This document shows positions 25,961 through 47,970 of a DNA stretch of 64,000 nt, one piece after another. The first letter of the stretch is position 1; every line of letters starts with the position of its first letter. Location: IMG/VR virus record IMGVR_UViG_3300042147_000020, positions 62,001 to 126,000 of that record; one strand, written 5' to 3'. A model generated the notes under the pieces. That model was not told the DNA's origin, made no database searches, and saw nothing but the letters and a program-made list of their open reading frames with translations. Position numbers and translations under genes: made by a program.

Positions 25961-26323
25961 TTAAAGGTACAGATACAAACCCGAGGGTCTGATCATCAAC
26001 GTCAATTCACCTTCTGGAATCAAGTGGTGGTTACACGCCTTGATCTTTCGGTAAAGCTGAGTACGTAACAAGTTTTGCTTGTCTAACTGGTGGATGAGTT
26101 TGTACACGTCTGTTGGAGCTGTGTCCTCTTGGAACATCAACAGCAGCGTACTTTCGATGCAGTCTTTGAGCCACGTTGTTTCGATGGTGATCATCAACCA
26201 CTGTGGATCGTGTTGGTGTAATAGATGTCGAAACTGGGGAGTACTCAACGCATCCCTGATCTCGCAGTGGAGCATGACCTGCATGTTGCGGTAATCGGTT
26301 ACTAACTGAAAGTCCATAGCCAC
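25961..26323 (-). CDS. Hypothetical protein, paralogue of 26327..26683
   Basis: 120 aa, C-terminus LMIRPSGLYLYL. Confidence 0.75.
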   Translation of the reverse strand: MAMDFQLVTDYRNMQVMLHCEIRDALSTPQFRHLLHQHDPQWLMITIETTWLKDCIESTLLLMFQEDTAPTDVYKLIHQLDKQNLLRTQLYRKIKACNHHLIPEGELTLMIRPSGLYLYL

Positions 26324-26326
26324 TCC

Positions 26327-26683
26327 CTAACTGTACAAGTACAACCCCGTAGGCTTGATGTGTAAGGATATAGTCTCGTGGAACTTCCTTGGTGTAATGT
26401 ATCTTGCTATACGTTTACGCAGAAGATGATCACGATCCAAGAAGCGCAAGACCCCATGAAGCACATTGATAAAATGAGAGGAGTAGTGGTGTTCCACTCT
26501 GATCCCCGTGAGTTCTTCAATGGTCTCCGTTAGCCAGAGGTGTTCAATTAGCTCCACCAGTTCTTCGTAGTCTCCGAAGGCTTGGGTGAGGTATTGAAAC
26601 TTGACCATCCCTAGTGCCACATCAATGTCATCCCTGAGGTGCACTTGAATCTGCCGAAACCCCATAACGAATTGAAGCCGCAT
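26327..26683 (-). CDS. Hypothetical protein, paralogue of 25961..26323
   Basis: 118 aa, C-terminus LHIKPTGLYLYS. Confidence 0.75.
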   Translation of the reverse strand: MRLQFVMGFRQIQVHLRDDIDVALGMVKFQYLTQAFGDYEELVELIEHLWLTETIEELTGIRVEHHYSSHFINVLHGVLRFLDRDHLLRKRIARYITPRKFHETISLHIKPTGLYLYS

Positions 26684-26715
26684 GATTCTAACCTTTCTGA
26701 AGGTTTGTTCAATTG

Positions 26716-26733
26716 GATAATATAGGTCTCAAA
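26716..26733 (-). promoter_or_regulatory. Early promoter driving the small-gene array
   Basis: Minus strand TTTGAGACCTATATTATC. Confidence 0.7.
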
Positions 26734-26859
26734 CTAATTAGGATGACCCCTATGCCCTTCTACTCTATACTATCTGGGGTTGGTGTGAACTTATACACGG
26801 AGTCGCTCACAGAGGCTCACAGAGGGCATAAAGCCCCTCACCGGATAACCAGCAAGGGG

Positions 26860-27670
26860 CTCGATGCTTTACACTGCCGTCGGTCGGCTATCTGTGAGTG
26901 GAGTCAGGTCCCCTCTCGGCCAACCTAGTGGGGTCGGAGTAGCCAGGCGTGTTTTCCCACCGAGCGCCCCTGACGGCGACAAGGATTACGGCTAGAACGT
27001 ACGCACCCCTCCAAATGCCCGGCTCGGCTGGTAAAGGTAGGATTCCAATGCGTACGCGATTTACTTAAAGTAAACCCCCTAATGAATTACCCTGTGTCTG
27101 GCCAGACCAAAGGAGCAACACATTAGAGGCTGCACTTTACCAGACGGCTGCCATATAGAGGCTGCGCACCGGTTTGTTACAACTTGAGCCCTTCGCGGGG
27201 GCCCCGTACCTTTTGTCTTACTGGTCGAGTGCGAGTCAACCTATACGACTTCCTGTTATACGTCCGGTTATCCAAGGTTAGGTTGCGGACGCCCCACCCT
27301 TGCCGGGCAGAGATACGTGATCTCCCGCGCTCGCAGGAGACGACGATTTAAGACCCCTGATCCTACCGGCTCTCTGGACAGAGTAGTCACTAGGTTTTGA
27401 CCGTGGTCAGGGGAATTCAAGCTACCCTCTCTCTTAGAGCTGTCTACACTTACACAATGACTCGGGTTAGACCCAAGGTCGTGATTTGGGGTTTGGTCCT
27501 AAAAGTAGTAACCATTCCTACGACAGACAGGGGATTAGCCTGTGAGGGTACAACTTAGGGTGAGTGGGAAAGCCTAAACCTTCCAGACAGTAGTGTGACC
27601 CGACGGGTTGGAGTCACCTGTCCTAGTGGGTAGATAAAGTCCACTTGGCGTTACCGCTACACTCACTTGG
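26860..27670 (-). ncRNA. Candidate large structured non-coding RNA (~800 nt)
   Basis: No credible CDS over ~1 kb. Many hairpins, long-range helices and a crossing helix. Followed by a terminator-like hairpin at ~26825-26870. Confidence 0.6.
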
Positions 27671-27673
27671 GGT

Positions 27674-28126
27674 TTAACGACCGCACCAACTCTTCTTGGT
27701 GCCACCGTCGTACGCAACTGCAAGACCATTCTTGATCAGCAGTTGTGCGATGTCTATGTCATCCACCATCACTGTGGAGACGATGCGGAAGTACTTATCA
27801 CGTTCAGGGTTCACCAGTGTAATCTGGTTGGCTGCGTCGATGTACTTCTTCAGCAACAGTCGGGCTTGACGTGCTTTGGCTTTCTCAGCTTCTTGCTCAG
27901 CGACTACTTTACAAGTGCTACGCATTTCAGGAGTATCAATCCCAGCCAAGCGAATCCCGATGTTCTTTCCGAAGAGGTCAGGAACCTCAGGGATGTTCAC
28001 ATAGAGAGTATCGCCATCGTAAATCCTAACCACTTGGGACGACTTCAGGTTGAAGTCCCCGAAGGCAAAGACGCTGAATGAAGCCAGCATCAGTACCAAT
28101 GTTGCCACAATGTTTCTAACCTTCAT
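27674..28126 (-). CDS. Thermonuclease (SNase-like) with N-terminal signal peptide
   Basis: VVRIYDGDTL, IRLAGIDTPE and DKYFRI motifs. MKVRNIVATLVLMLASFSVFA is a Sec-type signal. Confidence 0.88.
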   Translation of the reverse strand: MKVRNIVATLVLMLASFSVFAFGDFNLKSSQVVRIYDGDTLYVNIPEVPDLFGKNIGIRLAGIDTPEMRSTCKVVAEQEAEKAKARQARLLLKKYIDAANQITLVNPERDKYFRIVSTVMVDDIDIAQLLIKNGLAVAYDGGTKKSWCGR

Positions 28127-28184
28127 ACTAAACTCCAAGGGATATAGGACATACTATCCTTGGGTCGTCTGTAGGCTTCTTAAA

Positions 28185-28380
28185 GGGTGCCTTCTCTCTA
28201 CGTCGGGAAGGTTTATGTTCCGTTGCGCAGTACCATGACCTCGTTTGACCGAGAGAAGACATTACTCTTTACCCCATTAGTTCCCCTAGTTCTGATTACC
28301 CTGCGCGTCAGGTCGGTCGTAACTAGGGTAGGCGCGACAATGGCGCCTCGTTTTACTTCTGTTCCCTAAGGAACCTTCTA
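28185..28380 (-). ncRNA. Candidate structured RNA (~190 nt) downstream of a tRNA-like element
   Basis: No credible ORF. Minus-strand helices CCCTAGTT/AACTAGGG, GGCGC/GCGCC and CTGA/TCAG. Confidence 0.35.
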
Positions 28381-28381
28381 A

Positions 28382-28510
28382 TGGGCATCCCCGACAAGCC
28401 TCGAACTTGCGACCTCCAGCGCTCCTCTCGTTAAACCATCTTCACTACTGGAGAGTTAATGATGGAACTTGAGGTTGGACTGGTGCTCTAACCGACTGAG
28501 CTACGGGGAC
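28382..28510 (-). ncRNA. tRNA-like RNA with a 58-nt insert in place of the anticodon loop
   Basis: Acceptor GTCCCCG/CGGGGAT, D arm GCTC/GAGC, T arm GCAAG-TTCGAGG-CTTGT. Stem CCAGT/GCTGG encloses 58 nt. Ends G-CCCA. Confidence 0.8.
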
Positions 28511-28519
28511 GACTACAAA

Positions 28520-28607
28520 TGGCGGAAGAACAGAGATTCGAACTCTGGGGGCTGTTACACCCGACGGTTTTCAAGACCGTTGCCTTAAACCACTCGGCCA
28601 TCCTTCC
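28520..28607 (-). tRNA. trnS: tRNA-Ser(TGA)
   Basis: Cloverleaf with long variable arm, loop CT-TGA-AA, G73-CCA. Confidence 0.95.
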
Positions 28608-28611
28608 AAAA

Positions 28612-28955
28612 CAAGCCTCGATACTATTCCTCGAGGAAGTCACCGTACAGCCAAGGCGTTAGCTGTAATCCATTGGGAACTGAGCAAGAGTCGAATGGAA
28701 CTCGAAGTCAACATGCTCACTCCATCACTTCGGGACGGAGCACTCACCACCTGTCGTGTAGCCAGTGGATTTGTGGTTGGGTGACACCAGGCAGGGCAGG
28801 CGCTCGGTGTTTGGTCTCGTCGCTCGGTACCACCAAGTCATGCTGAGTTGCCACACGAAGCTCTCTTCTGTAGGCTGTAACAATCCCTACTCGAACCTAT
28901 GAGCCTCGGTCTCAGTGCATTGATAAATGCTATCGACAAGATTTGTGGGCTTAAG
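28612..28955 (-). ncRNA. Candidate structured RNA (~340 nt) in the tRNA leader
   Basis: No ORF. End pairing AAGCC/GGCTT and TCGAT/ATCGA. Hairpins TGAGC/GCTCA, TACAGC/GCTGTA and CTCC/GGAG. Confidence 0.4.
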
Positions 28956-29060
28956 CCTTAGCTCGAGCCATTAACTTTAGCAAGCCTTTTGCCAAGGGCT
29001 TGGTCTTCACCATGCGGCGAGGACGGTAGATCTGGAAGCACGGCATCGCTATTCTCCATT

Positions 29061-29735
29061 TCACTCGTGGGTTGTGGACAACTCACTGATGATGCACACT
29101 GACCCGTCTTCCACAGGAGTAGTATCGCTGTAGTCGACTTGATTGTAGACGCCCCCGTGGAACTGAAGAACACGATCGTTCCAAGAGCTGTCCAACCGTA
29201 GGGCTGGACAGATGGACTTACGACCTTGACACAGAACCGAAACGGATACGGAACCACCGGCGGTCACGTGAACACTGATCTTGAAAGGTACCCCAAGTGG
29301 GACATTCTCCAAGATGGTGGCGTTCATGATTACCGGATCGTCAAAACTAGCACGGAACCCGATCGTGAGCTTACCTTTGTTCCAGAACACCTTAAGCGGC
29401 GGGGTGTTCGAGTCTTTGACATGAAGCTGTGCTACCACAACCTTCTGGGCCCAGTTGACCTTGGTCAACGTCATTGTCTGGCGGCTCCAGTGATGGGCGG
29501 CACTTGACAAGGACCAGTAGTCAGCCTCTTTCCATTCCGTACGAGTACGGTGTACGCTTTTACTCGAAGCCCCCTTTGTGGGAGCAGTGAACTGAATGGA
29601 ACCGTCTTCGAGACGGAGCACGCAGCTTGCACAGTTGGCTAAAGCGTAGTCACCCATGACTTCTAGAGCCACTGGGTCAGTCGGAGAAACAGGTAGCGGT
29701 GTAGCGATGATGTACTGCGATATGTCGACAAACAT
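29061..29735 (-). CDS. Polysaccharide lyase family 7 (alginate lyase-like)
   Basis: ~224 aa. RTEWKE, AQLH and FHGGVYNQ correspond to the PL7 motifs R(S/T)ELR, QIH and YFKAGxYxQ. Confidence 0.8.
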   Translation of the reverse strand: MFVDISQYIIATPLPVSPTDPVALEVMGDYALANCASCVLRLEDGSIQFTAPTKGASSKSVHRTRTEWKEADYWSLSSAAHHWSRQTMTLTKVNWAQKVVVAQLHVKDSNTPPLKVFWNKGKLTIGFRASFDDPVIMNATILENVPLGVPFKISVHVTAGGSVSVSVLCQGRKSICPALRLDSSWNDRVLQFHGGVYNQVDYSDTTPVEDGSVCIISELSTTHE

Positions 29736-29780
29736 TCTGTCATCTCCAGTTAGGACCATAAGATGACGGAACGGGGAATG

Positions 29781-29869
29781 TGGCAGTAGATGAGAGATTC
29801 GAACTCTCGAGGCTGTTACACCTACACCCTTAGCAGGGGCGCTCCTTAATCCATCTCAGACAATCTACT
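29781..29869 (-). tRNA. trnS: tRNA-Ser(GCT)
   Basis: AGTAGAT/ATCTACT acceptor, CT-GCT-AA loop, long variable arm, GCCA end. Confidence 0.92.
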
Positions 29870-29877
29870 GTAAAGCA

Positions 29878-30030
29878 TTTGATCAAGACCCGGTGTGTTG
29901 TCTGTTGTATCCCTAAGGAGCCCCAAGCAGGATTTCGGGTTGTACCTGCAATACGACCTTTGTAGGCCTGTTATACCGTTTAGATAGGTTTTTAACTACT
30001 GGGGCACTTCTACAACACCACTGATCAAAA
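29878..30030 (-). ncRNA. Rod-like structured RNA directly after the tRNA-Asn CCA
   Basis: Terminal helices TTTGATCA/TGATCAAA, GGTGTTGT/ACAACACACC and GCCCCAG/TTGGGGC, with internal hairpins. Confidence 0.5.
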
Positions 30031-30031
30031 C

Positions 30032-30107
30032 TGGCTCCATGACCTGGACTCGAACCAGGGACATCTTAATTAACAGTCAAGCGCTCTACCAACTGAGCTA
30101 CCATGGA
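30032..30107 (-). tRNA. trnN: tRNA-Asn(GTT)
   Basis: Canonical cloverleaf, CT-GTT-AA loop, GCCA end. Confidence 0.95.
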
Positions 30108-30152
30108 ATTTATTCGGTAGTTCTACAAATCATACTGGTTTGCAGTATTTAT

Positions 30153-30476
30153 TTACACATCTTCAATCGGTCGTACTGAACCCTGGAGGTAAACGGAGAC
30201 ATTAGCAGCCGCAGAGTTAGCTAAAACACAACGACCAATGAAAGGGAACACACCGATGGTGTACATACCCACTTCAGCGAATGTCAGGTCTACTACCGGT
30301 ACGTAGGTGCCATCAGGAGCAAGGGCCTCTATCGTCACGTTACCACCACCCAAGGCTCCGGTGATGTAGATGTTCATGGGGTGGGTGTTGTCCATGTAGT
30401 CAAAATGTAAGGACGTGGCGTTCTCAGTGATGTGGTCAAACGCGGTGAAGATGTTACCACGGAGTTTGTTTGACAT
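30153..30476 (-). CDS. Hypothetical beta-rich protein
   Basis: 107 aa. Confidence 0.7.
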   Translation of the reverse strand: MSNKLRGNIFTAFDHITENATSLHFDYMDNTHPMNIYITGALGGGNVTIEALAPDGTYVPVVDLTFAEVGMYTIGVFPFIGRCVLANSAAANVSVYLQGSVRPIEDV

Positions 30477-30585
30477 TTCAGGGACTTCCTAAAGATAGGG
30501 GAAATAAAGGATCGACATACCATAAACGGCATAAAACCGAGCCCGAAGGCTCGGTTTTACTAATTACACGAAGGAGACGTAAAAC

Positions 30586-30768
30586 TTAAGTAGCCTTCAG
30601 GACTTCGGTCACCTTGATCTCGCGATCGTCGTAGACAACGCGCTGAGCTTGTTCACCGTCTTGTAGGATGAACTTCTCGTACACTTCGCCTGTAACGCGA
30701 TTCACGATAACCACTTCAACTTCTTTATCGGAAGCGCAGTGGGCTTGAGTAATTACAGTGGTAGTCAT
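30586..30768 (-). CDS. Small hypothetical protein
   Basis: 60 aa, AAGGAG RBS, followed by a terminator at ~30533-30558. Confidence 0.75.
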   Translation of the reverse strand: MTTTVITQAHCASDKEVEVVIVNRVTGEVYEKFILQDGEQAQRVVYDDREIKVTEVLKAT

Positions 30769-30777
30769 GACGACTCC

Positions 30778-31602
30778 TTAACGACGGTTGTAGTTGATGC
30801 GCTTAACTTCAAGTTCAGCGAACAAGTCCATCGGGTAATCGTCTGGCAGGTGAGCAGCAACTGTAGAGTTGGTGGTCTGCGGGTCGATCACAATGCTGAA
30901 CGGCAGCCGAACGAGGTTGCCCAGTGCACCGTTGATGATGATGTCGCGGTTGATCTTGGTCGCATTGCTGAATCGGGCCGCAACCTCTACACCGTCTTTG
31001 GTAACGATGCGCAGTAACTTGATCGAGTCGATGCTGTCAGTGGAGTCAATCGCTACACCACTGGCTCCGATCAGGCCGAACAGAGACTTGCGATCGCCGT
31101 CCTTCAACGGGAGACGGATCACCGAAGTGTCGCTCACGATGGTAGGTTCGTGTAGGATCTGCCAGTCTTCAGCCAGTTGATCCGATTGTGCCGGAGTCCA
31201 CGGGGTGAATACGTTCTGTGCAGTCTTCATGCCGACCCATGGTGCGAGTGTTGGACACTCGTTCTCACCGGGCTTGTAACCGACAGTTCCACAACCCACG
31301 TCGTAATGACCAGGCTGAACCATTACCAACCACATACCTTGACCATTCCACGAAGGACGCGTAACACGCTTGCCTTGCTTCAGGGCTTCGATGGCTAACC
31401 CGAAGGTCAGAGAATCGCACGGACGGTAGCTGTCCTCGAACACGGCTTTAGGCGACCAAGACTGGTGACCGTTGTCGTATTCCACAAGGTAGCCTTCATC
31501 GGCACCGTTTTCGTCAGCAGGTAACTCCCAGCCTTTGAGTTGGTTGTAGTCCAACCGAGACATCGGAGTTCCGATAACCTTCTTGGTACCAATGTAGTTC
31601 AT
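30778..31602 (-). CDS. tad2: DUF2829 / Tad2-family protein with N- and C-terminal extensions
   Basis: LTFGLAIEALKQGKRVTRPSWNGQGMWL...MKTAQNVFTPWTPAQSDQLAEDW is the DUF2829 signature. Confidence 0.8.
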   Translation of the reverse strand: MNYIGTKKVIGTPMSRLDYNQLKGWELPADENGADEGYLVEYDNGHQSWSPKAVFEDSYRPCDSLTFGLAIEALKQGKRVTRPSWNGQGMWLVMVQPGHYDVGCGTVGYKPGENECPTLAPWVGMKTAQNVFTPWTPAQSDQLAEDWQILHEPTIVSDTSVIRLPLKDGDRKSLFGLIGASGVAIDSTDSIDSIKLLRIVTKDGVEVAARFSNATKINRDIIINGALGNLVRLPFSIVIDPQTTNSTVAAHLPDDYPMDLFAELEVKRINYNRR

Positions 31603-31624
31603 GTTATCTACCTTGAATGAATGA

Positions 31625-31703
31625 GGGTCCCCCTACCGGATTCGAACCGATGCTCGCTACCCACGAAGGGCGGCAGCTCTAACCGACTGAGCTTAAGGGC
31701 GAC
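31625..31703 (-). pseudogene. Degenerate tRNA
   Basis: D arm and T arm (ATCGG-TTCGAAT-CCGGT) intact. G:G mismatch in the acceptor, irregular anticodon arm, no CCA. Confidence 0.6.
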
Positions 31704-31710
31704 ATTAAAA

Positions 31711-31872
31711 CTAGCAAACCATCACAGGGACGGGAATGCCTTGTTCTTTGCAAACACGCTCAAGGTTAGCCTGAGCATCCTGCCATTGTTTTAGTCTGGC
31801 GAGGGTTTCCTCACGAGACTGGGGTTTGATCTTGGAACGATCCAGATCACTTAAGCGAAATGTACGTACCAT
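31711..31872 (-). CDS. 53-aa hypothetical protein (below the ORF-track cutoff)
   Basis: MVRTFRLSDLDRSKIKPQSREETLARLKQWQ..., GGGAG RBS. Confidence 0.6.
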   Translation of the reverse strand: MVRTFRLSDLDRSKIKPQSREETLARLKQWQDAQANLERVCKEQGIPVPVMVC

Positions 31873-31881
31873 GACTACTCC

Positions 31882-32133
31882 CTAATCAATAGCGATGCGA
31901 CCGTAAAGGGTTCGCCCGCCGACTTTGACGTCGAAGTGATGGAAGTAACGACCGGTATCGCTACCGAGCCATTTGTCAGTTCCGTTGTCTAGTTCAACTG
32001 CATAACAATCGCCTTTCCATTTACGGATGGCTTGACTCACCTTATTACAAGAGTAAGTCACTTGCCTTGCAGAGAACGTAGGGAACAGTTGCTTAACGAT
32101 CCGACGCATCGCTGCGAAGTGTCCTTCAGACAT
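31882..32133 (-). CDS. Hypothetical protein
   Basis: 83 aa, AGGAG RBS. Confidence 0.75.
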   Translation of the reverse strand: MSEGHFAAMRRIVKQLFPTFSARQVTYSCNKVSQAIRKWKGDCYAVELDNGTDKWLGSDTGRYFHHFDVKVGGRTLYGRIAID

Positions 32134-32149
32134 TGACTGCTCTCCTGAA

Positions 32150-32225
32150 TGGCTCCGGGCCTTGGGTTCGAACCAAGGACCAACGCATTAACAGTACGCT
32201 GCTCTACCAACTGAGCTAACCCGAA
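32150..32225 (-). tRNA. trnN: tRNA-Asn(GTT), second divergent copy
   Basis: Canonical cloverleaf, CT-GTT-AA loop, GCCA end. Confidence 0.93.
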
Positions 32226-32231
32226 AGAATT

Positions 32232-32365
32232 TGGTGGTCAGTACCGGACTCTTAACCGGCTGCATCCATCTTACGACTAAAACTGCCCCGACTCGTAAGC
32301 AGTGGAAGGTTTCTAACGTAGAACGCGTTGTTTTCCCTAGGTTATCGCTACATGAGTCAGCGACC
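32232..32365 (-). ncRNA. ACCA-ending RNA with acceptor and T-like arms and an internal pseudoknot
   Basis: GGTCGCT/ACTGACC-ACCA, CCGG-TTAAGAGT-CCGG arm, crossing helices ACTGC/GCAGT and CTTACGA/TCGTAAG. Confidence 0.45.
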
Positions 32366-32395
32366 AGTGTGATCCTAGTTTCTCTCTACGTTGAT

Positions 32396-32530
32396 TTTTT
32401 GAAGTTGACAGGGGAGAAGGGCGGCTCGTTTTATCTCCCGACTTGTACCCATGCACCTTAATGAACCACTGGGCGGCTCCTTTGAGTGCGGTTCGGCTGT
32501 ACCCTACCGTCTGTCAATCAACTTCAAAAA
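32396..32530 (-). ncRNA. Rod-like structured RNA directly after the tRNA-Asp CCA
   Basis: TTTTTGAAG/CTTCAAAAA, TTGACAG/CTGTCAA and AGGG/CCCT stacked helices. Confidence 0.5.
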
Positions 32531-32532
32531 AG

Positions 32533-32609
32533 TGGCGCCTCCGAACGGACTCGAACCGTCGACCCCTAGCGTGACAGGCTAGTGCTCTAACCAACTGAGC
32601 TACGGAAGC
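32533..32609 (-). tRNA. trnD: tRNA-Asp(GTC)
   Basis: Canonical cloverleaf, CT-GTC-AC loop, GCCA end. Confidence 0.95.
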
Positions 32610-32692
32610 AATGAAAAGTCCTGCTGGGCTTGCAGCGAGCTAACGGCGAACCGTTTGGTGCAAGAGCTGATCCAGCAGGGTGTTCTTGAAAT

Positions 32693-33126
32693 TGGCTCTG
32701 GCTTGCTTCCCGTTTGAATCGGGTCACTGAACTCGTTGTACGTAGGTACCCGCCAGACCGGTCGAAGACAAGGCTACTTCCTAAGACATCGCCAAGTCAC
32801 AATCTCGTTATCCTAAGCCACCCCCTAGGCACCTAATTGGATAACGTTACTACGTACGAGTTTGGGTGATCCTCCCGGCGTCTGAACGCCGAGTTAATGC
32901 ACAGTGAGCCGGATTTTCGTAACGCACAAAGGCAAACGACACGGCATGGCAAAGGATCATGTTCTACTCTACTTGCCCGTGGGTTAGAAGTCCTAGACTT
33001 ATTTTCCCTGATCACCGTAGATCAATGACGTAGCTCCGTGGCCTACTCCTTTCTAGGGGAGAGCAAACTTCGCGTTACAGGGTAAAACCATTACGTAGCC
33101 AGCAAGGGTCTCCGCAATGTTAAAAG
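32693..33126 (-). ncRNA. Structured RNA after tRNA-Gln (element B, up to ~430 nt)
   Basis: Shares ordered motifs with element A. Further helices AACTCG/CGAGTT, TACGTAG/CTACGTA, GTTATCC/GGATAAC and CGGCGT/ACGCCG. Confidence 0.5.
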
Positions 33127-33205
33127 TGGAAGAGGGAGATGGATTCGAACCATCGAATGTCGGGATCAAAACCCGATGCCTTTGGCCAGACTTGGCGATC
33201 CCTCT
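33127..33205 (-). tRNA. trnQ: tRNA-Gln(TTG)
   Basis: AGAGGGA/TCCCTCT acceptor, TT-TTG-AT loop, CCA end. Confidence 0.92.
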
Positions 33206-33209
33206 AGAA

Positions 33210-33351
33210 TTTTCTCACCTCGCCGCTAGGACGGCCCTAGCGACTTATTTTGCCGTGACCCCGGAGTTCAAGGTTGTCGACTCGGCTCGTTACGCCTTGC
33301 CCTACACGGTAAAACCCATGTGTAGGCACGAAGGCCAGCACATGTTAAAAG
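33210..33351 (-). ncRNA. Structured RNA after tRNA-Tyr (element A, ~140 nt)
   Basis: Hairpins CCTACAC/GTGTAGG and CGCTAGG/CCTAGCG, with motifs shared with element B. Confidence 0.55.
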
Positions 33352-33437
33352 TGGTGGGTGAGGTAGGATTCGAACCTACGAAGCACACGGCGTCAGATTT
33401 ACAATCTGATAACTTTGAACCACTTGTATACTCACCC
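33352..33437 (-). tRNA. trnY: tRNA-Tyr(GTA)
   Basis: GGGTGAG/CTCACCC acceptor, TT-GTA-AA loop, variable arm, ACCA end. Confidence 0.93.
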
Positions 33438-33572: not shown

Positions 33573-33730
33573 TGCCCCTTGGTTGGATTCGAACCAACGA
33601 CCCTATCCGTTCAACCGACTCCGTTTAACGGGAGAGTTTAGTTACACCCGCTCAGTCAACTCCACCTTACGGTTCATGTTGCGAATACGAATGCTCTCGG
33701 ACTGTTCTACCAGACTGAACTACAAGAGGC
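33573..33730 (-). ncRNA. tRNA-like RNA with an 88-nt insert in place of the anticodon loop
   Basis: Acceptor CCTCTTG/CAAGGGG with a possible G-1:C73 pair, D arm GTTC/GAAC, T arm GTTGG-TTCGAAT-CCAAC. GTCCG/CGGAT encloses 33610-33697. Confidence 0.8.
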
Positions 33731-33747: not shown

Positions 33748-33848
33748 GGCCCCTAGGATCAGATTCGAACTGATGACCTTCACAGAGACACTACCTCAAT
33801 TCAGTAGGCGTGTCTCTACAGCGCTCTAACCATCTGAGCTACCCAGGG
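33748..33848 (-). ncRNA. tRNA-like RNA with a 42-nt extended anticodon arm
   Basis: Acceptor CCCTGGG/CCTAGGG, D arm GCTC/GAGC, T arm ATCAG-TTCGAAT-CTGAT. Arm AGAGACAC/GTGTCTCT plus CTAC/GTAG. Confidence 0.8.
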
Positions 33849-38614: not shown

Positions 38615-39366
38615 TGACCTACCAAGAAGGTAAGTACAGTACGTTCACCCACAACGGTAAGGAGTACCCTCTCGACCCGTTTCTGAAGCGTGCTGAGAAG
38701 CTCCACGCTAAGTCAGTTTCTATGGCGAAGCTGGAGTGGAACGTACAAACAGCACAGCCTGATCCGAAACGGGTGGCCACTGCTGACATCAATTACCCAA
38801 TCCTCTACACGATTGACCCTAAGTGGGGATACGTTGTAGTGGATGGCCTGCACCGTTTGACCAAAGCTTACCAAATGGGTAAGCGGTCGATCATGGGTAA
38901 AGAAATACCTCAAGAGTGGTTTGACGAGATAGGTACTGTTTCAATGGAAGACTCAAGCAATCCATCCTACACCGTTGGTCAGGTGACTCGTGAGCGAGCA
39001 TTCGACTGGCTCGCACAAAACCGTCAGCAACGCCCTGAGCCGCTGTTACAAGATTCCTATAGCTCAGGTGGTACTGGGGTGGATCGTGTGTACGCCTTCG
39101 CTTACCAAGGGGACGAGATCGTAGGTTACGCTAGCCTGTTGAATGGTCAGCGCTACCTGATCGACATGTACGTCCCTGAGTCACTGCGGGGTCAGGGTAT
39201 CGGTCGCCAACTGATCGACTCGCTGTTGGTGGATCTGGTGGTAGTTCGTAAAGATCAGGAAGACATCATTGCTTTCCTGAAGGCTACAGGCTTCTCGCTG
39301 GAGAACGACTTTGTTAATACCAAGGTCTATCGGAAGTATCATGGACCTAAAGTCCACGCTTACTGA
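38614..39366 (+). CDS. ParB-N-like / GNAT acetyltransferase two-domain protein
   Basis: VVVDGLHRL in the N half, MYVPESLRGQGIG (acetyl-CoA-binding motif A) in the C half, linker VSMED. Confidence 0.65.
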   Translation: MTYQEGKYSTFTHNGKEYPLDPFLKRAEKLHAKSVSMAKLEWNVQTAQPDPKRVATADINYPILYTIDPKWGYVVVDGLHRLTKAYQMGKRSIMGKEIPQEWFDEIGTVSMEDSSNPSYTVGQVTRERAFDWLAQNRQQRPEPLLQDSYSSGGTGVDRVYAFAYQGDEIVGYASLLNGQRYLIDMYVPESLRGQGIGRQLIDSLLVDLVVVRKDQEDIIAFLKATGFSLENDFVNTKVYRKYHGPKVHAY

Positions 39367-39407
39367 CGGCATAGAGAGAGGCTCCCCGCCTCTCTCTTTT
39401 ATGCGCT

Positions 39408-45719: not shown

Positions 45720-45759
45720 GCGCATAACGAGGGAGGCCCAAGGCCTCCCTCTATGCCGT

Positions 45760-47970
45760 CTATCGACGCATCAGTGCTTGCCAGTGACTGGTGTTCGGTT
45801 TGGTCGAACTACCACCCCAGTTGATTCCCTTCGAGAAGAAATCGCTTTGGGTTTGTCGCTGAGACTTCTGGTTACGAGCCAGTCGTTCATCAGCCGCACG
45901 TTTGATCAAGGAGTCCATGTTAGTGATCTCCTCGGTGTCCTCAGTTACCCGAGTACTCAAGAACCGCAAACGAGCCTCACACTTAGTTACCGTGAAGGTA
46001 TCGTTAGCCTCACTGAGTTGCTCGTACAGATCGTCAATCTCCTTGCGGAACAACTTCTGCATTTGCTTCTCGTAGATTTCTTCTTGAGTCATCTGCTTAC
46101 TGTTGTCACTGACCCCAATCATTACCTGACTGCGGTCGATGCCATAGAACTCGAGGTTCCTCCCCAACGTAAGCAACCAGTTAGCCAACAGCCACGCGAC
46201 TACCGTGTCATCGTGCCCAGAAGCTTCGTGGTCAATCCGCCCTCGTTTCACTACCAACGCTCGGATCTCTCCTGACAGCACCTTGTCCCTTACCAGATGG
46301 CCTGACTTCTTCGCCGCGTTCTGCAACACAGTGGAGTAGAGGGTCATGCGTGATTCAGCAGAGGTGTTGAAACCAAAGTATTTCTTGGTAGCATCGTAGA
46401 ACGTGCTGGTACGACTGGTTGCCGGTTTCGAGATCTCCTTGAACAGATCCGGCTTCTCGTTCGCGTCATCAACGATACGGTTGAAAATACGACGGAAAGG
46501 ATCAATCCCGTGCTTAGGCAGAATCATCAACAGGGCGTCAACGATCATCTGGCCAGTCGACTTCTTCTCTGGGATCAAGGTCATGTTAGGGTACTTAACC
46601 ATGATCTCAGCCAGAGCGTTCGAGAAGCGGATCAAGTTGGTTTCGTTCACAGTGAACGCACCGACTACAGACAGATCACGCGCAGAGATAATAACACCCG
46701 CGATAGCATCTCGACCCACGGCTTCTGAAGTATCGAGACCGAGGATGAACGTGTCGTTGCGTTTGGCGACTTCCAGTTCCTTCTCGTCCAAGTACCAACG
46801 AATGCAGTACAGCTCTTTCGTGATCTCGGTGTACTTGACATCCCGAATCGAATCGCGGATCTTTTCGTTGAGTGCAGGAGTGAGTGGGGAACTCTGAGTA
46901 CCAGAAGTCCATACGTTGAAGAAGTCACGGTCAGCAGCCTCACCAAACGAGGAAGCCTGTGCCATCGCTTCGTACAACCATTCATCCGTGTAGCCCAACT
47001 GACGGTGACTGAAGGTGGCGTTGATCATCAACTTACGTCCAGCGCAGTTGACTTTAACCATTTGCTTCAGAGCGTCAATGTCCACACAGTCGTAGAACAA
47101 CTCAGTCCACGATGCAGCACCGTGAATCATGTCGTACATGAACTTACCGTCCCGGTCATCCTTCTTACCGGCGGTTGTGGTAAAGATGTTGCCGTGTGGT
47201 CGACCGTATTGCTTGGCCTCAGCACGAGCAGTGGTAGCAGCAGCCAGTGCAGCAGGTAGCGTGGTACCGATGTGGTTAATGAAGGGACCTTCGTCGATGT
47301 GGGTGATCGGTGCAGTCAGACCACGACCTAGGTTGTTTGCAGTGGACTCGGAGTTTTGTGCAACACCAGTGGTGTACTGGTTATCGTGAGTCTTACAAGT
47401 CACCTCGAATTGGTTGTCCGAGTCATCACGGTGTTTAGGCACCAAGTACTGCGGCAACAGATCACGCAGCTTCTTGATACGCTCAACGTTCTTCTTACGA
47501 AGCCCGTCATCCTTGGTGATCATGTTGATGATGGAGTTACCAGCACCAATGAACAGAAGCCACAACATCACACAGTCAGTAGACACTGACTTACCTGTCT
47601 GTCGAGGCTGGATCAACGCGATGTCGATACTGTTCAAGAACGCCCATGTTATCGCAATGTTACCCCGGTTAGCTTTGTACTGAATCGGGTTAGGACCAGA
47701 CACCGGAGGAATACGTACGACTTCACGCAGGAAGTACCAGATGTTGTAACGACACTCGATACCGATCGCAATCTTGGTCGCATCAGAAAGAATGGCGGAG
47801 TGTGGATCAACGCCCTTCAGGTCTTGGTTAATCAGTGCGAGTGGAAAATATCGGTTCTGGATCTTCATCTCCCCATACAGGGAAACCAGTCGTAGAAAGG
47901 ATTCGTTCTTGGTGTCGAAGTCCGGTCTAGCTGTCGTGAACCGATTCCAATCTTTGGCAAATAGAATCAT
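45760..47970 (-). CDS. terL: Terminase large subunit
   Basis: Walker A PRQTGKS, Walker B IDEG, coupling motif TTAG, nuclease LGLDTS and HDDTVVA. Start MILF at 47970. Confidence 0.92.
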   Translation of the reverse strand: MILFAKDWNRFTTARPDFDTKNESFLRLVSLYGEMKIQNRYFPLALINQDLKGVDPHSAILSDATKIAIGIECRYNIWYFLREVVRIPPVSGPNPIQYKANRGNIAITWAFLNSIDIALIQPRQTGKSVSTDCVMLWLLFIGAGNSIINMITKDDGLRKKNVERIKKLRDLLPQYLVPKHRDDSDNQFEVTCKTHDNQYTTGVAQNSESTANNLGRGLTAPITHIDEGPFINHIGTTLPAALAAATTARAEAKQYGRPHGNIFTTTAGKKDDRDGKFMYDMIHGAASWTELFYDCVDIDALKQMVKVNCAGRKLMINATFSHRQLGYTDEWLYEAMAQASSFGEAADRDFFNVWTSGTQSSPLTPALNEKIRDSIRDVKYTEITKELYCIRWYLDEKELEVAKRNDTFILGLDTSEAVGRDAIAGVIISARDLSVVGAFTVNETNLIRFSNALAEIMVKYPNMTLIPEKKSTGQMIVDALLMILPKHGIDPFRRIFNRIVDDANEKPDLFKEISKPATSRTSTFYDATKKYFGFNTSAESRMTLYSTVLQNAAKKSGHLVRDKVLSGEIRALVVKRGRIDHEASGHDDTVVAWLLANWLLTLGRNLEFYGIDRSQVMIGVSDNSKQMTQEEIYEKQMQKLFRKEIDDLYEQLSEANDTFTVTKCEARLRFLSTRVTEDTEEITNMDSLIKRAADERLARNQKSQRQTQSDFFSKGINWGGSSTKPNTSHWQALMRR

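What the first reader, a model, noticed from the sequence alone, without database searches (positions are those of the whole stretch)
26860..27670. ~800-nt gene-free, highly structured region: candidate large ornate ncRNA
Seen: nearly 1 kb without a credible CDS, starting right after the thermonuclease stop and ending at a terminator-like hairpin. Helices include CCCCTGA/TCAGGGG (27354-60/27407-13), TCTCCCGCG/CGCAGGAGA and GTACGCA/TGCGTAC (26999-27005/27049-55). That last helix is crossed by CTGGTAAAG/CTTTACCAG (27028-36/27135-43), a pseudoknot. A possible end-to-end helix is GTGAGTG/CACTCAC (26894-900/27660-66). Established: large ornate RNAs such as GOLLD and ROOL occur near phage tRNA clusters. 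Inference: a member of one of these classes or of a new class; I could not match it to a known family.
Basis: partly seen in the sequence, partly recalled or inferred. Interest (0 to 1): 0.8.

Follow-up and report, generated by a model that had tools for sequence, protein, structure and literature searches.

The report
New giant structured RNA in jumbo phage
The gene-free stretch encodes a large, intricately folded non-coding RNA of a family not yet in any RNA database; it sits at the end of the transfer-RNA gene array of an uncultured nucleus-forming jumbo phage, the same setting as the enigmatic GOLLD and ROOL RNAs.

Summary
The gap is real (26684-27673, no credible CDS). It holds an 844-nt structured RNA on the MINUS strand, window 27668-26825.

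Evidence:
- 27 distinct homologues from soil, rhizosphere and wastewater jumbo-phage contigs, in a long form (825-844 nt) and a short form (641-663 nt).
- The gap is better conserved than the flanking genes.
- Substitutions show no codon periodicity, and indels are mostly not multiples of three.
- 80 of 232 (long) and 71 of 178 (short) predicted pairs carry compensatory double changes.
- The 245-position 5' core is 98% paired, against 85% in shuffles (0 of 500 reach it).
- G-U pairs outnumber A-C about 10:1, which fixes the strand.

Context: in most relatives the RNA starts 1-3 nt after the CCA end of tRNA-Leu(UAA). Here an SNase gene is inserted between them.

Rfam 15 gives no match for 12 members, so it is neither GOLLD, ROOL, an intron, RNase P nor tmRNA. 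The closest cultured phages lack it.

The pseudoknot and the end-to-end helix are not.

Function is unknown. Best guess: a stable, trans-acting RNA released from the tRNA transcript, analogous to GOLLD/ROOL. Transcription is not yet shown.

The parts
26825..27668 (-). The RNA gene (844 nt). The 5' end AAGUGAG is at 27668. The 3' end is the hairpin plus CUUUAUGCC at 26825.
   Evidence: The homology boundary is sharp at 27668 in loci with different upstream neighbours. 27 distinct homologues. Covariation.
27560..27666 (-). Domain 1. Helix P1 (27666-27660 / 27566-27560) closes over four hairpins. These include the loop with invariant AUCUACCC and the apical CCCGUCGG.
   Evidence: P1 is 100% paired with a U-A to C-G exchange. 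Hairpin 27584-27578/27573-27567 has 3 compensatory pairs.
27421..27551 (-). Domain 2. Helix P2 GUACCCUC/GAGGGUAG closes a multi-branch junction. It contains invariant GUAAGUGUAGAC and UACUAC..UUAGGAC.
   Evidence: 6 of 7-8 P2 pairs show compensatory changes, e.g. ACCCUC/GAGGGU to GUUUCC/GGAAAC.
27354..27414 (-). It is absent from the 14 short-form members.
   Evidence: 9 bp, 96% paired, 1 compensatory pair. Deleted as a block in short forms.
27316..27345 (-).
   Evidence: 8 bp, 6 compensatory pairs.
27208..27278 (-). Sub-domain closed by ACCUU/AAGGU, with two inner hairpins and invariant CUCGCA.
   Evidence: The 5-bp closing helix has 2 covarying pairs and is found in both the all-sequence and the long-form scans. 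Inner helices have 5 and 3 compensatory pairs.
27186..27204 (-). Hairpin with a conserved GCGAA-containing loop, followed by invariant CAAGUUGU.
   Evidence: 6 bp. 5-6 of 6 pairs show compensatory changes across 27 sequences.
27077..27129 (-). Long covarying arm whose tip is an invariant, self-complementary GGCC loop (27100-27103).
   Evidence: 21 distinct arm sequences all fold with GGCC at the apex. 9 of 15 pairs are compensatory.
26997..27057 (-).
   Evidence: 10 bp, 6 compensatory pairs, 95% paired.
26882..26925 (-). Long-form 3' domain with the nearly invariant block GGCCGAGAGGGGACCUGACUC.
   Evidence: The block GAGAGGGGACCUGACUC is identical in all 13 long forms, and the leading GGCC reads GGCU in four of them. 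Helix 26925-26919/26888-26882 is 93% paired.
26826..26867 (-). Terminal GC-rich hairpin (core 26833-26862) followed by CUUUAU. Candidate terminator and 3' end.
   Evidence: 17 bp, 3 compensatory pairs. Different hairpins occupy the same place in short forms. Not called by the strict terminator scan.
26819..26833 (-). Motif CTTTATGCCCTCTGT, conserved in all homologues. It is not part of the fold.
   Evidence: Recurs just after gene ends at 39362-39376 (-) and 45749-45763 (+).
26684..26789 (-). Promoter-like leader of the next gene: TTCACA-N16-TAGAGT (26789-26762) and ACCTATATTATCC (26727-26715).
   Evidence: The second motif recurs upstream of other minus-strand genes (4293, 34830, 44044).
27674..28138 (-). 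SNase-family nuclease gene. It is an insertion between the tRNA array and the RNA.
   Evidence: PF00565, E = 2.7e-11. Present in 6 of 27 lineages and absent in the others, where tRNA-Leu(UAA) abuts the RNA.
28190..28211 (-). Small hairpin CCUUC..GAAGG. In relatives it precedes tRNA-Leu(UAA) or directly abuts the RNA.
   Evidence: L011, L087, L055, L059.
28520..33437 (-). Array of tRNA genes in the same orientation as the RNA.

Best explanation
SHOWN. Window 27668-26825 (minus strand) is the gene of a previously unclassified family of large structured non-coding RNAs.
- The family has a long form of 825-844 nt and a short form of 641-663 nt.
- It is carried by a clade of uncultured jumbo phages that encode chimallin (the phage-nucleus shell protein).
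- The fold is modular. A strongly conserved 5' core of about 250 nt forms two multi-branch domains. A middle region includes an arm tipped by an invariant GGCC loop. A variable 3' region is swapped between the long and short forms.
- The gene is the last unit of the phage's tRNA array and has the same orientation as the tRNAs.

INFERRED.
- The RNA is transcribed together with the tRNAs.
- Its 5' end is set free by the 3'-end processing of the preceding tRNA. That tRNA is ancestrally tRNA-Leu(UAA), whose CCA lies 1-3 nt upstream.
- Helix P1, which starts at nucleotide 3, protects that 5' end.
- The 3' end is formed at the terminal GC-rich hairpin.
- The RNA then acts in trans as a stable structural RNA, the way GOLLD and ROOL are thought to. 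Most likely it does so as an RNA-only assembly or RNA-protein assembly linked to tRNA or translation during infection. The self-complementary GGCC loop is a candidate contact between or within molecules.

Confidence that it is a genuine structured ncRNA of a new family is about 0.9. Confidence in the GOLLD/ROOL-like mode of action is about 0.35.
For: - Conservation: the gap is better conserved than the flanking CDS. Homology stops exactly at 27668 and at the next start codon.
- Homologues: 27 distinct sequences.
- Covariation: RNAalifold gives 83 pairs, 45 of them compensatory, on all 27 sequences. The long set has 80 of 232 pairs compensatory and the short set 71 of 178. Paired cells are 93-95%, against 36-46% when partners are slid.
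- 5' core: a covariance model finds exactly one copy per phage and nothing significant (one marginal match, E = 0.36) in about 45 unrelated loci. 98.0% of cells are paired, against 85.4% in shuffles. 31 of 47 pairs change on both sides, against 17.9 in shuffles; 0 of 500 shuffles reach either value.
- Strand: G-U/U-G 361 against A-C 41 in the long set, and 294 against 22 in the short set. Fold z-score is -3.07 on the minus strand and +0.16 on the plus strand.
- Not coding: substitutions by position mod 3 are 814/800/856, and 198 of 213 indels are not multiples of three. The SNase CDS gives 82/45/197.
- tRNA abutment.
- Phage type: nuclear shell protein and split RNAP beta subunits.
- GGCC loop.
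- Literature: GOLLD and ROOL are phage RNAs often near tRNA islands. GOLLD env-38 lies downstream of tRNA-Met (PMC12286853).
Against: - No direct evidence of transcription or of the RNA ends. The runs that hold relatives are kept as contigs. Those contigs also span the flanking genes at the same depth, so they may be DNA or polycistronic RNA.
- The terminal hairpin is followed by only a short U-run, and the terminator scan did not call it.
- No sequence or structure similarity to GOLLD or ROOL.
- The conservation pattern (5' conserved, 3' variable) is the opposite of GOLLD's.
- A four-base loop is short for a kissing contact.
- The family is known only from one narrow uncultured clade.
Confidence: 0.55

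Rival explanations
1. Cis-acting 3' module of the tRNA operon. A structured trailer would terminate transcription, block 3' exonucleases or guide processing of tRNA-Leu, possibly also acting as a sponge. It would have no independent trans function.
For: It directly abuts the CCA end of the last tRNA in most lineages. It ends in a hairpin. Own knowledge: the 3' external transcribed spacer of the E. coli leuZ operon acts as an sRNA sponge.
Against: - 640-845 nt with about 40 conserved helices is far more than termination or protection needs.
- The fold is kept unchanged where SNase or HNH genes, or only a small hairpin, separate it from any tRNA.
Confidence: 0.15
2. Decoy or scaffold RNA in phage counter-defence or host takeover. 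It would bind host proteins such as RNases, anticodon nucleases or ribosomes, or bind phage proteins.
For: The tRNA array carries accessory and anti-defence genes, including a Tad2-like gene at 30778..31602 and the SNase. Long invariant unpaired blocks, such as GGCCGAGAGGGGACCUGACUC and AUCUACCC, suit protein or RNA binding.
Against: No partner has been identified. The neighbouring small proteins have no recognisable RNA-binding family.
Confidence: 0.15
3. A ribozyme, for example one that cleaves itself at the tRNA junction to release both RNAs, or one with another catalytic activity.
For: The 5' boundary is sharp, 1-3 nt after CCA. The element starts with GUGAGYG inside helix P1. Size and conservation are in the range of large ribozymes.
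Against: No match to any ribozyme or intron model in Rfam. The boundary is explained just as well by ordinary tRNA 3' processing.
Confidence: 0.08
4. A very divergent member of GOLLD or ROOL that the Rfam models miss.
For: Same genomic niche and a similar size.
Against: No match at E up to 10 for the window, or up to 5 for 11 further members. The conservation pattern is opposite to GOLLD's.
Confidence: 0.05
5. A decayed or recoded protein-coding gene, or a DNA-level element such as an origin or packaging site.
For: Frame 0 of the minus strand has no TGA codon. The region is GC-richer than its flanks.
Against: - No codon periodicity, and indels are not in threes.
- That frame has 14 TAA/TAG stops.
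- Compensatory pairing and a 9-13-fold excess of G-U over A-C point to single-stranded RNA of one strand.
Confidence: 0.02

Closest known systems
GOLLD RNA (Rfam family; Weinberg 2009; cryo-EM structure in PMC12286853)
   Same: - Very large (>800 nt in the long form), ornate, multi-domain RNA.
- Encoded by phages, next to or linked with tRNA genes.
- Function unknown.
- Modular, with a conserved half and a variable half.
   Different: - No match to the GOLLD covariance model.
- Here the 5' part is conserved and the 3' part variable, the reverse of GOLLD.
- The host phages are chimallin-encoding jumbo phages of soil and wastewater.
- Oligomeric state unknown.
ROOL RNA (Rfam family; PMC5737381, PMC12286853)
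   Same: A large structured RNA of phages and prophages, often near tRNA islands. No known protein partner and no known function.
   Different: No match to the ROOL model. Different length and architecture. Abundance and nanocage formation are untested here.
Phage T4 RNAC and RNAD (stable RNAs of the T4 tRNA region; PMC3014915)
   Same: Non-tRNA RNAs transcribed from a phage tRNA gene cluster, of unknown role.
   Different: The T4 species are small (own knowledge: about 140 nt). This RNA is 5-6 times larger, with dozens of conserved helices.
3' external transcribed spacer of tRNA operons (e.g. E. coli 3'ETS-leuZ; own knowledge)
   Same: A functional RNA made from the sequence just downstream of a tRNA-Leu gene and released by tRNA processing.
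   Different: 3'ETS RNAs are short and act by base-pairing. This RNA is a large, autonomous fold that is kept even when it is separated from the tRNA.

Membership tests
GOLLD | Scores against the Rfam GOLLD covariance model | tested here: not met
   cmscan at gathering threshold on the window. At E<=10 on 26500-27900. At E<=5 on 11 loci holding diverse members. No GOLLD hit in any.
GOLLD | Encoded by phages or prophages, often beside or enclosing tRNA genes | tested here: met
   Jumbo-phage contig. The RNA ends the tRNA array and abuts tRNA-Leu(UAA) in most relatives.
GOLLD | Universally conserved 3' region and less conserved 5' region (PMC12286853) | tested here: not met
   Identity to the window sequence is 0.70-0.85 over the first 240 nt and 0.39-0.64 beyond. 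The 3' domain differs between the long and short forms.
GOLLD | Self-assembles into a 14-mer nanocage | not testable with these tools
   Needs in-vitro transcription plus cryo-EM or SEC-MALS.
ROOL | Scores against the Rfam ROOL covariance model | tested here: not met
   no hit.
ROOL | Phage or prophage location near tRNA islands | tested here: met
ROOL | Closed homo-oligomeric nanocage; very high cellular abundance | not testable with these tools
   Only contig-level depth is available, and it is similar to that of the flanking genes.
Group I / group II introns | Match to the intron covariance models, and interruption of a host gene with conserved exon flanks | tested here: not met
   No Rfam hit. 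The upstream flank varies: tRNA-Leu, tRNA-Ser, an SNase gene, an HNH gene or a hairpin.
RNase P RNA / tmRNA / rRNA fragments | Match to the Rfam models or to the ARAGORN tmRNA search | tested here: not met
Protein-coding gene (intact, decayed or recoded) | Open frame, third-position bias of substitutions, indels in multiples of three | tested here: not met
   12-22 stops per frame. Substitutions 814/800/856 by position mod 3, against 82/45/197 in the SNase CDS. 198 of 213 indels are not multiples of three.
Intrinsic terminator (the RNA's 3' end) | GC-rich hairpin followed by a U-run | tested here: inconclusive
   The hairpin is conserved, with 3 compensatory pairs. The tail is only CUUUAU, and the consensus scan did not call it.

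The most novel reading that the evidence does not exclude
This would be a third, independent class of giant phage RNAs tied to tRNA arrays, and the first specific to nucleus-forming (chimallin) jumbo phages. It would have its own function, for example handling, sequestering or exporting phage tRNAs or other cargo across or around the phage nucleus, or an undescribed catalytic activity. That function would not be a variant of whatever GOLLD and ROOL do.
Probability: 0.25. Interest if true: 0.9.

Novelty: new variant of a known kind. Interest (0 to 1): 0.74.

Why it matters
GOLLD and ROOL are among the largest bacterial and phage RNAs without a known function. Both sit near phage tRNA islands and were recently shown to form RNA-only nanocages.

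An unrelated family of 640-845 nt in the same niche suggests that a giant RNA at the end of a phage tRNA array is a recurrent solution to some general problem of phage infection. It gives a third, independent data point for working out what that problem is.

This family also has natural long and short forms and a sharply defined conserved core. Both make good starting material for structural and deletion studies.

It occurs in nucleus-forming jumbo phages, where RNA traffic between compartments is an open question.

Tried and rejected
- Rfam 15 at gathering and at permissive E-values, on the window and on 11 relatives. Only tRNAs matched.
- blastn of three family members against 50,697 cultured-phage records. 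No match.
- Megablast of 20 kb of the window. Only tRNA-sized and other short matches of 44-86 nt.
- Six-frame reading, including a look for stop-codon recoding. Rejected.
Not conserved.
- Seven IMG/VR pattern scans. These gave only 7 contigs of one clade, and an independent middle-domain pattern found no more distant members.
- The genome-contig scan gave one hit (L061), which the covariance model rejects as chance.
- Covariance-model search of the syntenic 30 kb of the two closest cultured phages, Xanthomonas phages Xoo-sp14 and LucasX (DNA polymerase 42-44% identical), with filters off. Nothing found, and no tRNAs there either.
- Read laying on four runs. Relatives are present in wastewater 'RNA-Seq' libraries and in runs of a coded 'organism C'. 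They are present only as contigs that also cover the flanking genes, so transcription is neither shown nor excluded.
- The neighbouring small proteins (the 118-aa paralogue family and others). No Pfam, PHROG or Atlas lead to an RNA-binding partner.

Full report
**What is at the coordinates.**
All local genes and the eight tRNAs called by default ARAGORN lie on the minus strand. The SNase-family nuclease gene (27674..28138; PF00565) and the next ORF (26327..26683) are separated by 990 nt. In that gap every frame has 12-22 stops and the longest ORF is 71 aa. The minus strand folds clearly better than dinucleotide shuffles (-367.9 kcal/mol, z = -3.07). The plus strand does not (z = +0.16). Rfam 15 gives nothing there, even at E <= 10.

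**The genome.**
The window is part of IMG/VR contig 3300042147_000020, 238.8 kb. It encodes a nuclear-shell (chimallin) protein, split RNA-polymerase beta subunits, a tail sheath and a terminase. It is therefore a Chimalliviridae-like, nucleus-forming jumbo phage. Its DNA polymerase is at most 44% identical to that of any cultured phage; the best matches are Xanthomonas, Burkholderia and Ralstonia jumbo phages.

**Homologues.**
Three routes yielded 27 distinct copies of the element, all in related jumbo-phage contigs from rhizosphere, soil, compost, food and wastewater samples:
- searches with the flanking proteins;
- DNA-pattern scans of IMG/VR, JGI metagenomes and GTDB genomes;
- a protein-family route through the downstream 118-aa paralogues.

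The copies fall into a long form (825-844 nt, 13 sequences) and a short form (641-663 nt, 14 sequences). Pairwise identity runs from about 52% to 97%.

The non-coding stretch is more conserved than the neighbouring CDS. Homology begins abruptly at AAGUGAG (window 27668), whatever lies upstream. The indel breakpoints seen in assembled relatives fall at 27668 and at 26686-26689.

**It is an RNA, on the minus strand, and not coding.**
- Substitutions between the window and the 12 other long forms are spread evenly over positions mod 3 (814/800/856).
- 198 of 213 pairwise indels are not multiples of three.
- The adjacent SNase CDS shows the usual third-position excess (82/45/197).
- RNAalifold on all 27 sequences predicts 83 pairs, 45 of them with compensatory double changes.
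- On the long and short sets separately, 80 of 232 and 71 of 178 pairs are compensatory. 93.3% and 94.8% of cells are paired. When the 3' partners are slid by 1-3 columns these fall to 36-46% paired and 9-24 compensatory pairs.
- A covariance model of the 245-position 5' core finds one copy per phage (222-274 bits for full-length copies). It finds nothing else in 700 kb that includes about 45 unrelated viral loci.
- On the resulting alignment 98.0% of cells pair, against 85.4% in shuffles. 31 of 47 pairs change on both sides, against 17.9 in shuffles. No shuffle in 500 reaches either value.
- In the predicted pairs G-U/U-G outnumber A-C/C-A by 361 to 41 in the long set and 294 to 22 in the short set. 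Only the minus-strand RNA can form these pairs.

**Architecture, in window coordinates on the minus strand.**
- Domain 1: helix P1 (27666-27660 with 27566-27560) closes four hairpins. These include a loop with invariant AUCUACCC.
- Domain 2: helix P2 (GUACCCUC/GAGGGUAG, 27551-27544 with 27429-27421) has six covarying pairs and closes a multi-branch junction.
- Arm 27414-27354 is present only in the long form.
- Hairpins follow at 27345-27316, 27312-27292 and 27291-27261.
- A sub-domain is closed by ACCUU/AAGGU (27278-27208).
- A hairpin with a GCGAA-containing loop lies at 27204-27186.
- A 50-nt arm (27129-27077) has a stem that differs in 21 variants, while its tip is always the self-complementary GGCC (27100-27103).
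- In the long form only, two further domains follow (27057-26997 and 26992-26882). They contain the nearly invariant block GGCCGAGAGGGGACCUGACUC.
- Both forms end in a GC-rich hairpin (here 26867-26826) followed by CUUUAUGCC.

**What lies downstream.**
The remaining ~140 nt of the gap are not part of the fold. They hold a TATG-containing motif that recurs after other genes. They also hold a sigma-70-like hexamer pair and the motif ACCTATATTATCC, which recurs upstream of other genes. I read these as promoter signals for the downstream gene cluster; this is inference.

Three are confirmed with covariation: CCCCTGA/TCAGGGG, TCTCCCGCG/CGCAGGAGA and GTACGCA/TGCGTAC. The proposed pseudoknot CTGGTAAAG/CTTTACCAG is complementary in only about five of the 13 long forms and is not compensated. 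The 'end-to-end' helix is out-competed by the local P1, which covaries perfectly.

**Genomic context.**
- In 15 of the 27 lineages tRNA-Leu(UAA) ends 1-3 nt before the first base of the RNA.
- In one lineage a type-II tRNA with an altered anticodon takes that place, and in one, tRNA-Ser(UGA).
- In six, including the window, an SNase gene is inserted between the tRNA array and the RNA. In one, an HNH endonuclease gene is inserted there.
- In the remaining three no tRNA abuts the RNA: in two only a small hairpin precedes it.

The fold is unchanged in all of these arrangements. The ancestral arrangement is therefore tRNA array, then tRNA-Leu(UAA), then the large RNA, then the hairpin. This points to co-transcription and to release of the RNA's 5' end by tRNA 3'-end processing; that is inference. 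Insertion of free-standing nuclease genes at this junction is what one expects next to a highly conserved target sequence.

**Transcription.**
Two wastewater 'RNA-Seq' libraries and many runs of a coded 'organism C' hold relatives. The share of indexed words roughly doubles, from 0.09 to 0.17, when only the RNA region is used as the query. These runs are stored as contigs, however. The contigs also span the flanking genes at the same assembler depth, so DNA carry-over or polycistronic RNA cannot be separated. Expression is therefore not shown.

**Comparison with what is known.**
GOLLD and ROOL are large ornate RNAs of phages and prophages, often near tRNA islands. GOLLD env-38 lies downstream of tRNA-Met, and tRNAs can sit inside GOLLD. 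Both form RNA-only nanocages, and their function is unknown (PMC12286853). Phage T4 also transcribes two small RNAs of unknown role from its tRNA region (PMC3014915).

The present RNA shares the niche, the size class and the modularity. It fails the membership tests: no hit to either covariance model for 12 members, and a conservation pattern opposite to GOLLD's. It also matches no intron, RNase P, tmRNA or ribozyme model. The syntenic regions of the two closest cultured phages have neither tRNAs nor this RNA.

**Verdict.**
This is a genuine new family of large structured phage ncRNA (confidence about 0.9). It works, as far as the anatomy says, like the GOLLD/ROOL kind: a stable RNA linked to the tRNA array. 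My best mechanistic guess has confidence of about 0.35. It is release from the tRNA transcript, followed by action in trans as a structural RNA or assembly, with the GGCC-tipped arm and the invariant single-stranded blocks as contact sites.

The rivals remain open: a purely cis-acting operon trailer, a counter-defence decoy, and a ribozyme. Coding and DNA-level readings are rejected.

Noticed in passing
window 28386-28510 (-): A tRNA-like gene with an insertion of about 51-58 nt in the anticodon loop. Default ARAGORN and the Rfam gathering scan miss it. ARAGORN in intron mode finds it, and so does the Rfam tRNA model at 45.2 bits with permissive filters. Homologues of 129 nt are conserved in relatives (L011:1913-2041, L070:1097-1225, L088:52-180). 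The insert is too short for a group I intron, and its nature is unknown.
   Followed up: partly
window 33573-33730 and 33748-33848 (-): ARAGORN in intron mode proposes two more tRNAs with inserts of 81 and 19 nt, in the ~930-nt gene-free stretch upstream of the tRNA array. Rfam does not confirm them.
   Followed up: no
window 27674-28138; L068:1276-1809: Free-standing nuclease genes occupy the same junction between the last tRNA and the large RNA. An SNase gene is there in 6 lineages and an HNH_3 gene in one. The junction keeps an ACCA(G)-like remnant of the tRNA 3' end, which suggests repeated targeted insertion.
   Followed up: partly
window 29061-29759 and 30778-31602 (-): The tRNA array is interspersed with accessory genes: an alginate lyase (PF08787, E = 7e-40) and a Tad2-like anti-Thoeris domain protein (PF11195, E = 8e-23). 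Tad2-like genes hold the same place in most relatives.
   Followed up: no
window 4293, 26715, 34830, 44044 (-); 26819, 39362 (-), 45749 (+): Two recurring intergenic motifs. ACCTATATTAYC lies upstream of genes: 5 matches against 0.58 expected. CTYTATGCCGTCTNT lies just after gene ends: 3 matches against 0.27 expected. Both are candidate phage-specific promoter or terminator signals.
   Followed up: partly
window 25961-26683 (-) and relatives: A family of ~118-aa paralogues with an invariant C-terminal motif RP(T/S)GLYL. One to three copies lie directly downstream of the RNA. No Pfam, PHROG or Atlas annotation. 24 cluster representatives were found in 5.8 billion proteins, all from this phage clade.
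   Followed up: partly
runs X26-X45 (coded 'organism C'): Many small runs from at least eight studies of one named organism, listed as RNA (flagged 'RNA?'), hold a relative of this phage. One of them holds a 94-kb contig that lacks both the SNase gene and the 118-aa paralogues. That organism's cultures may carry a related jumbo phage and could offer an experimental system. The identity is coded, so it could not be followed.
   Followed up: no
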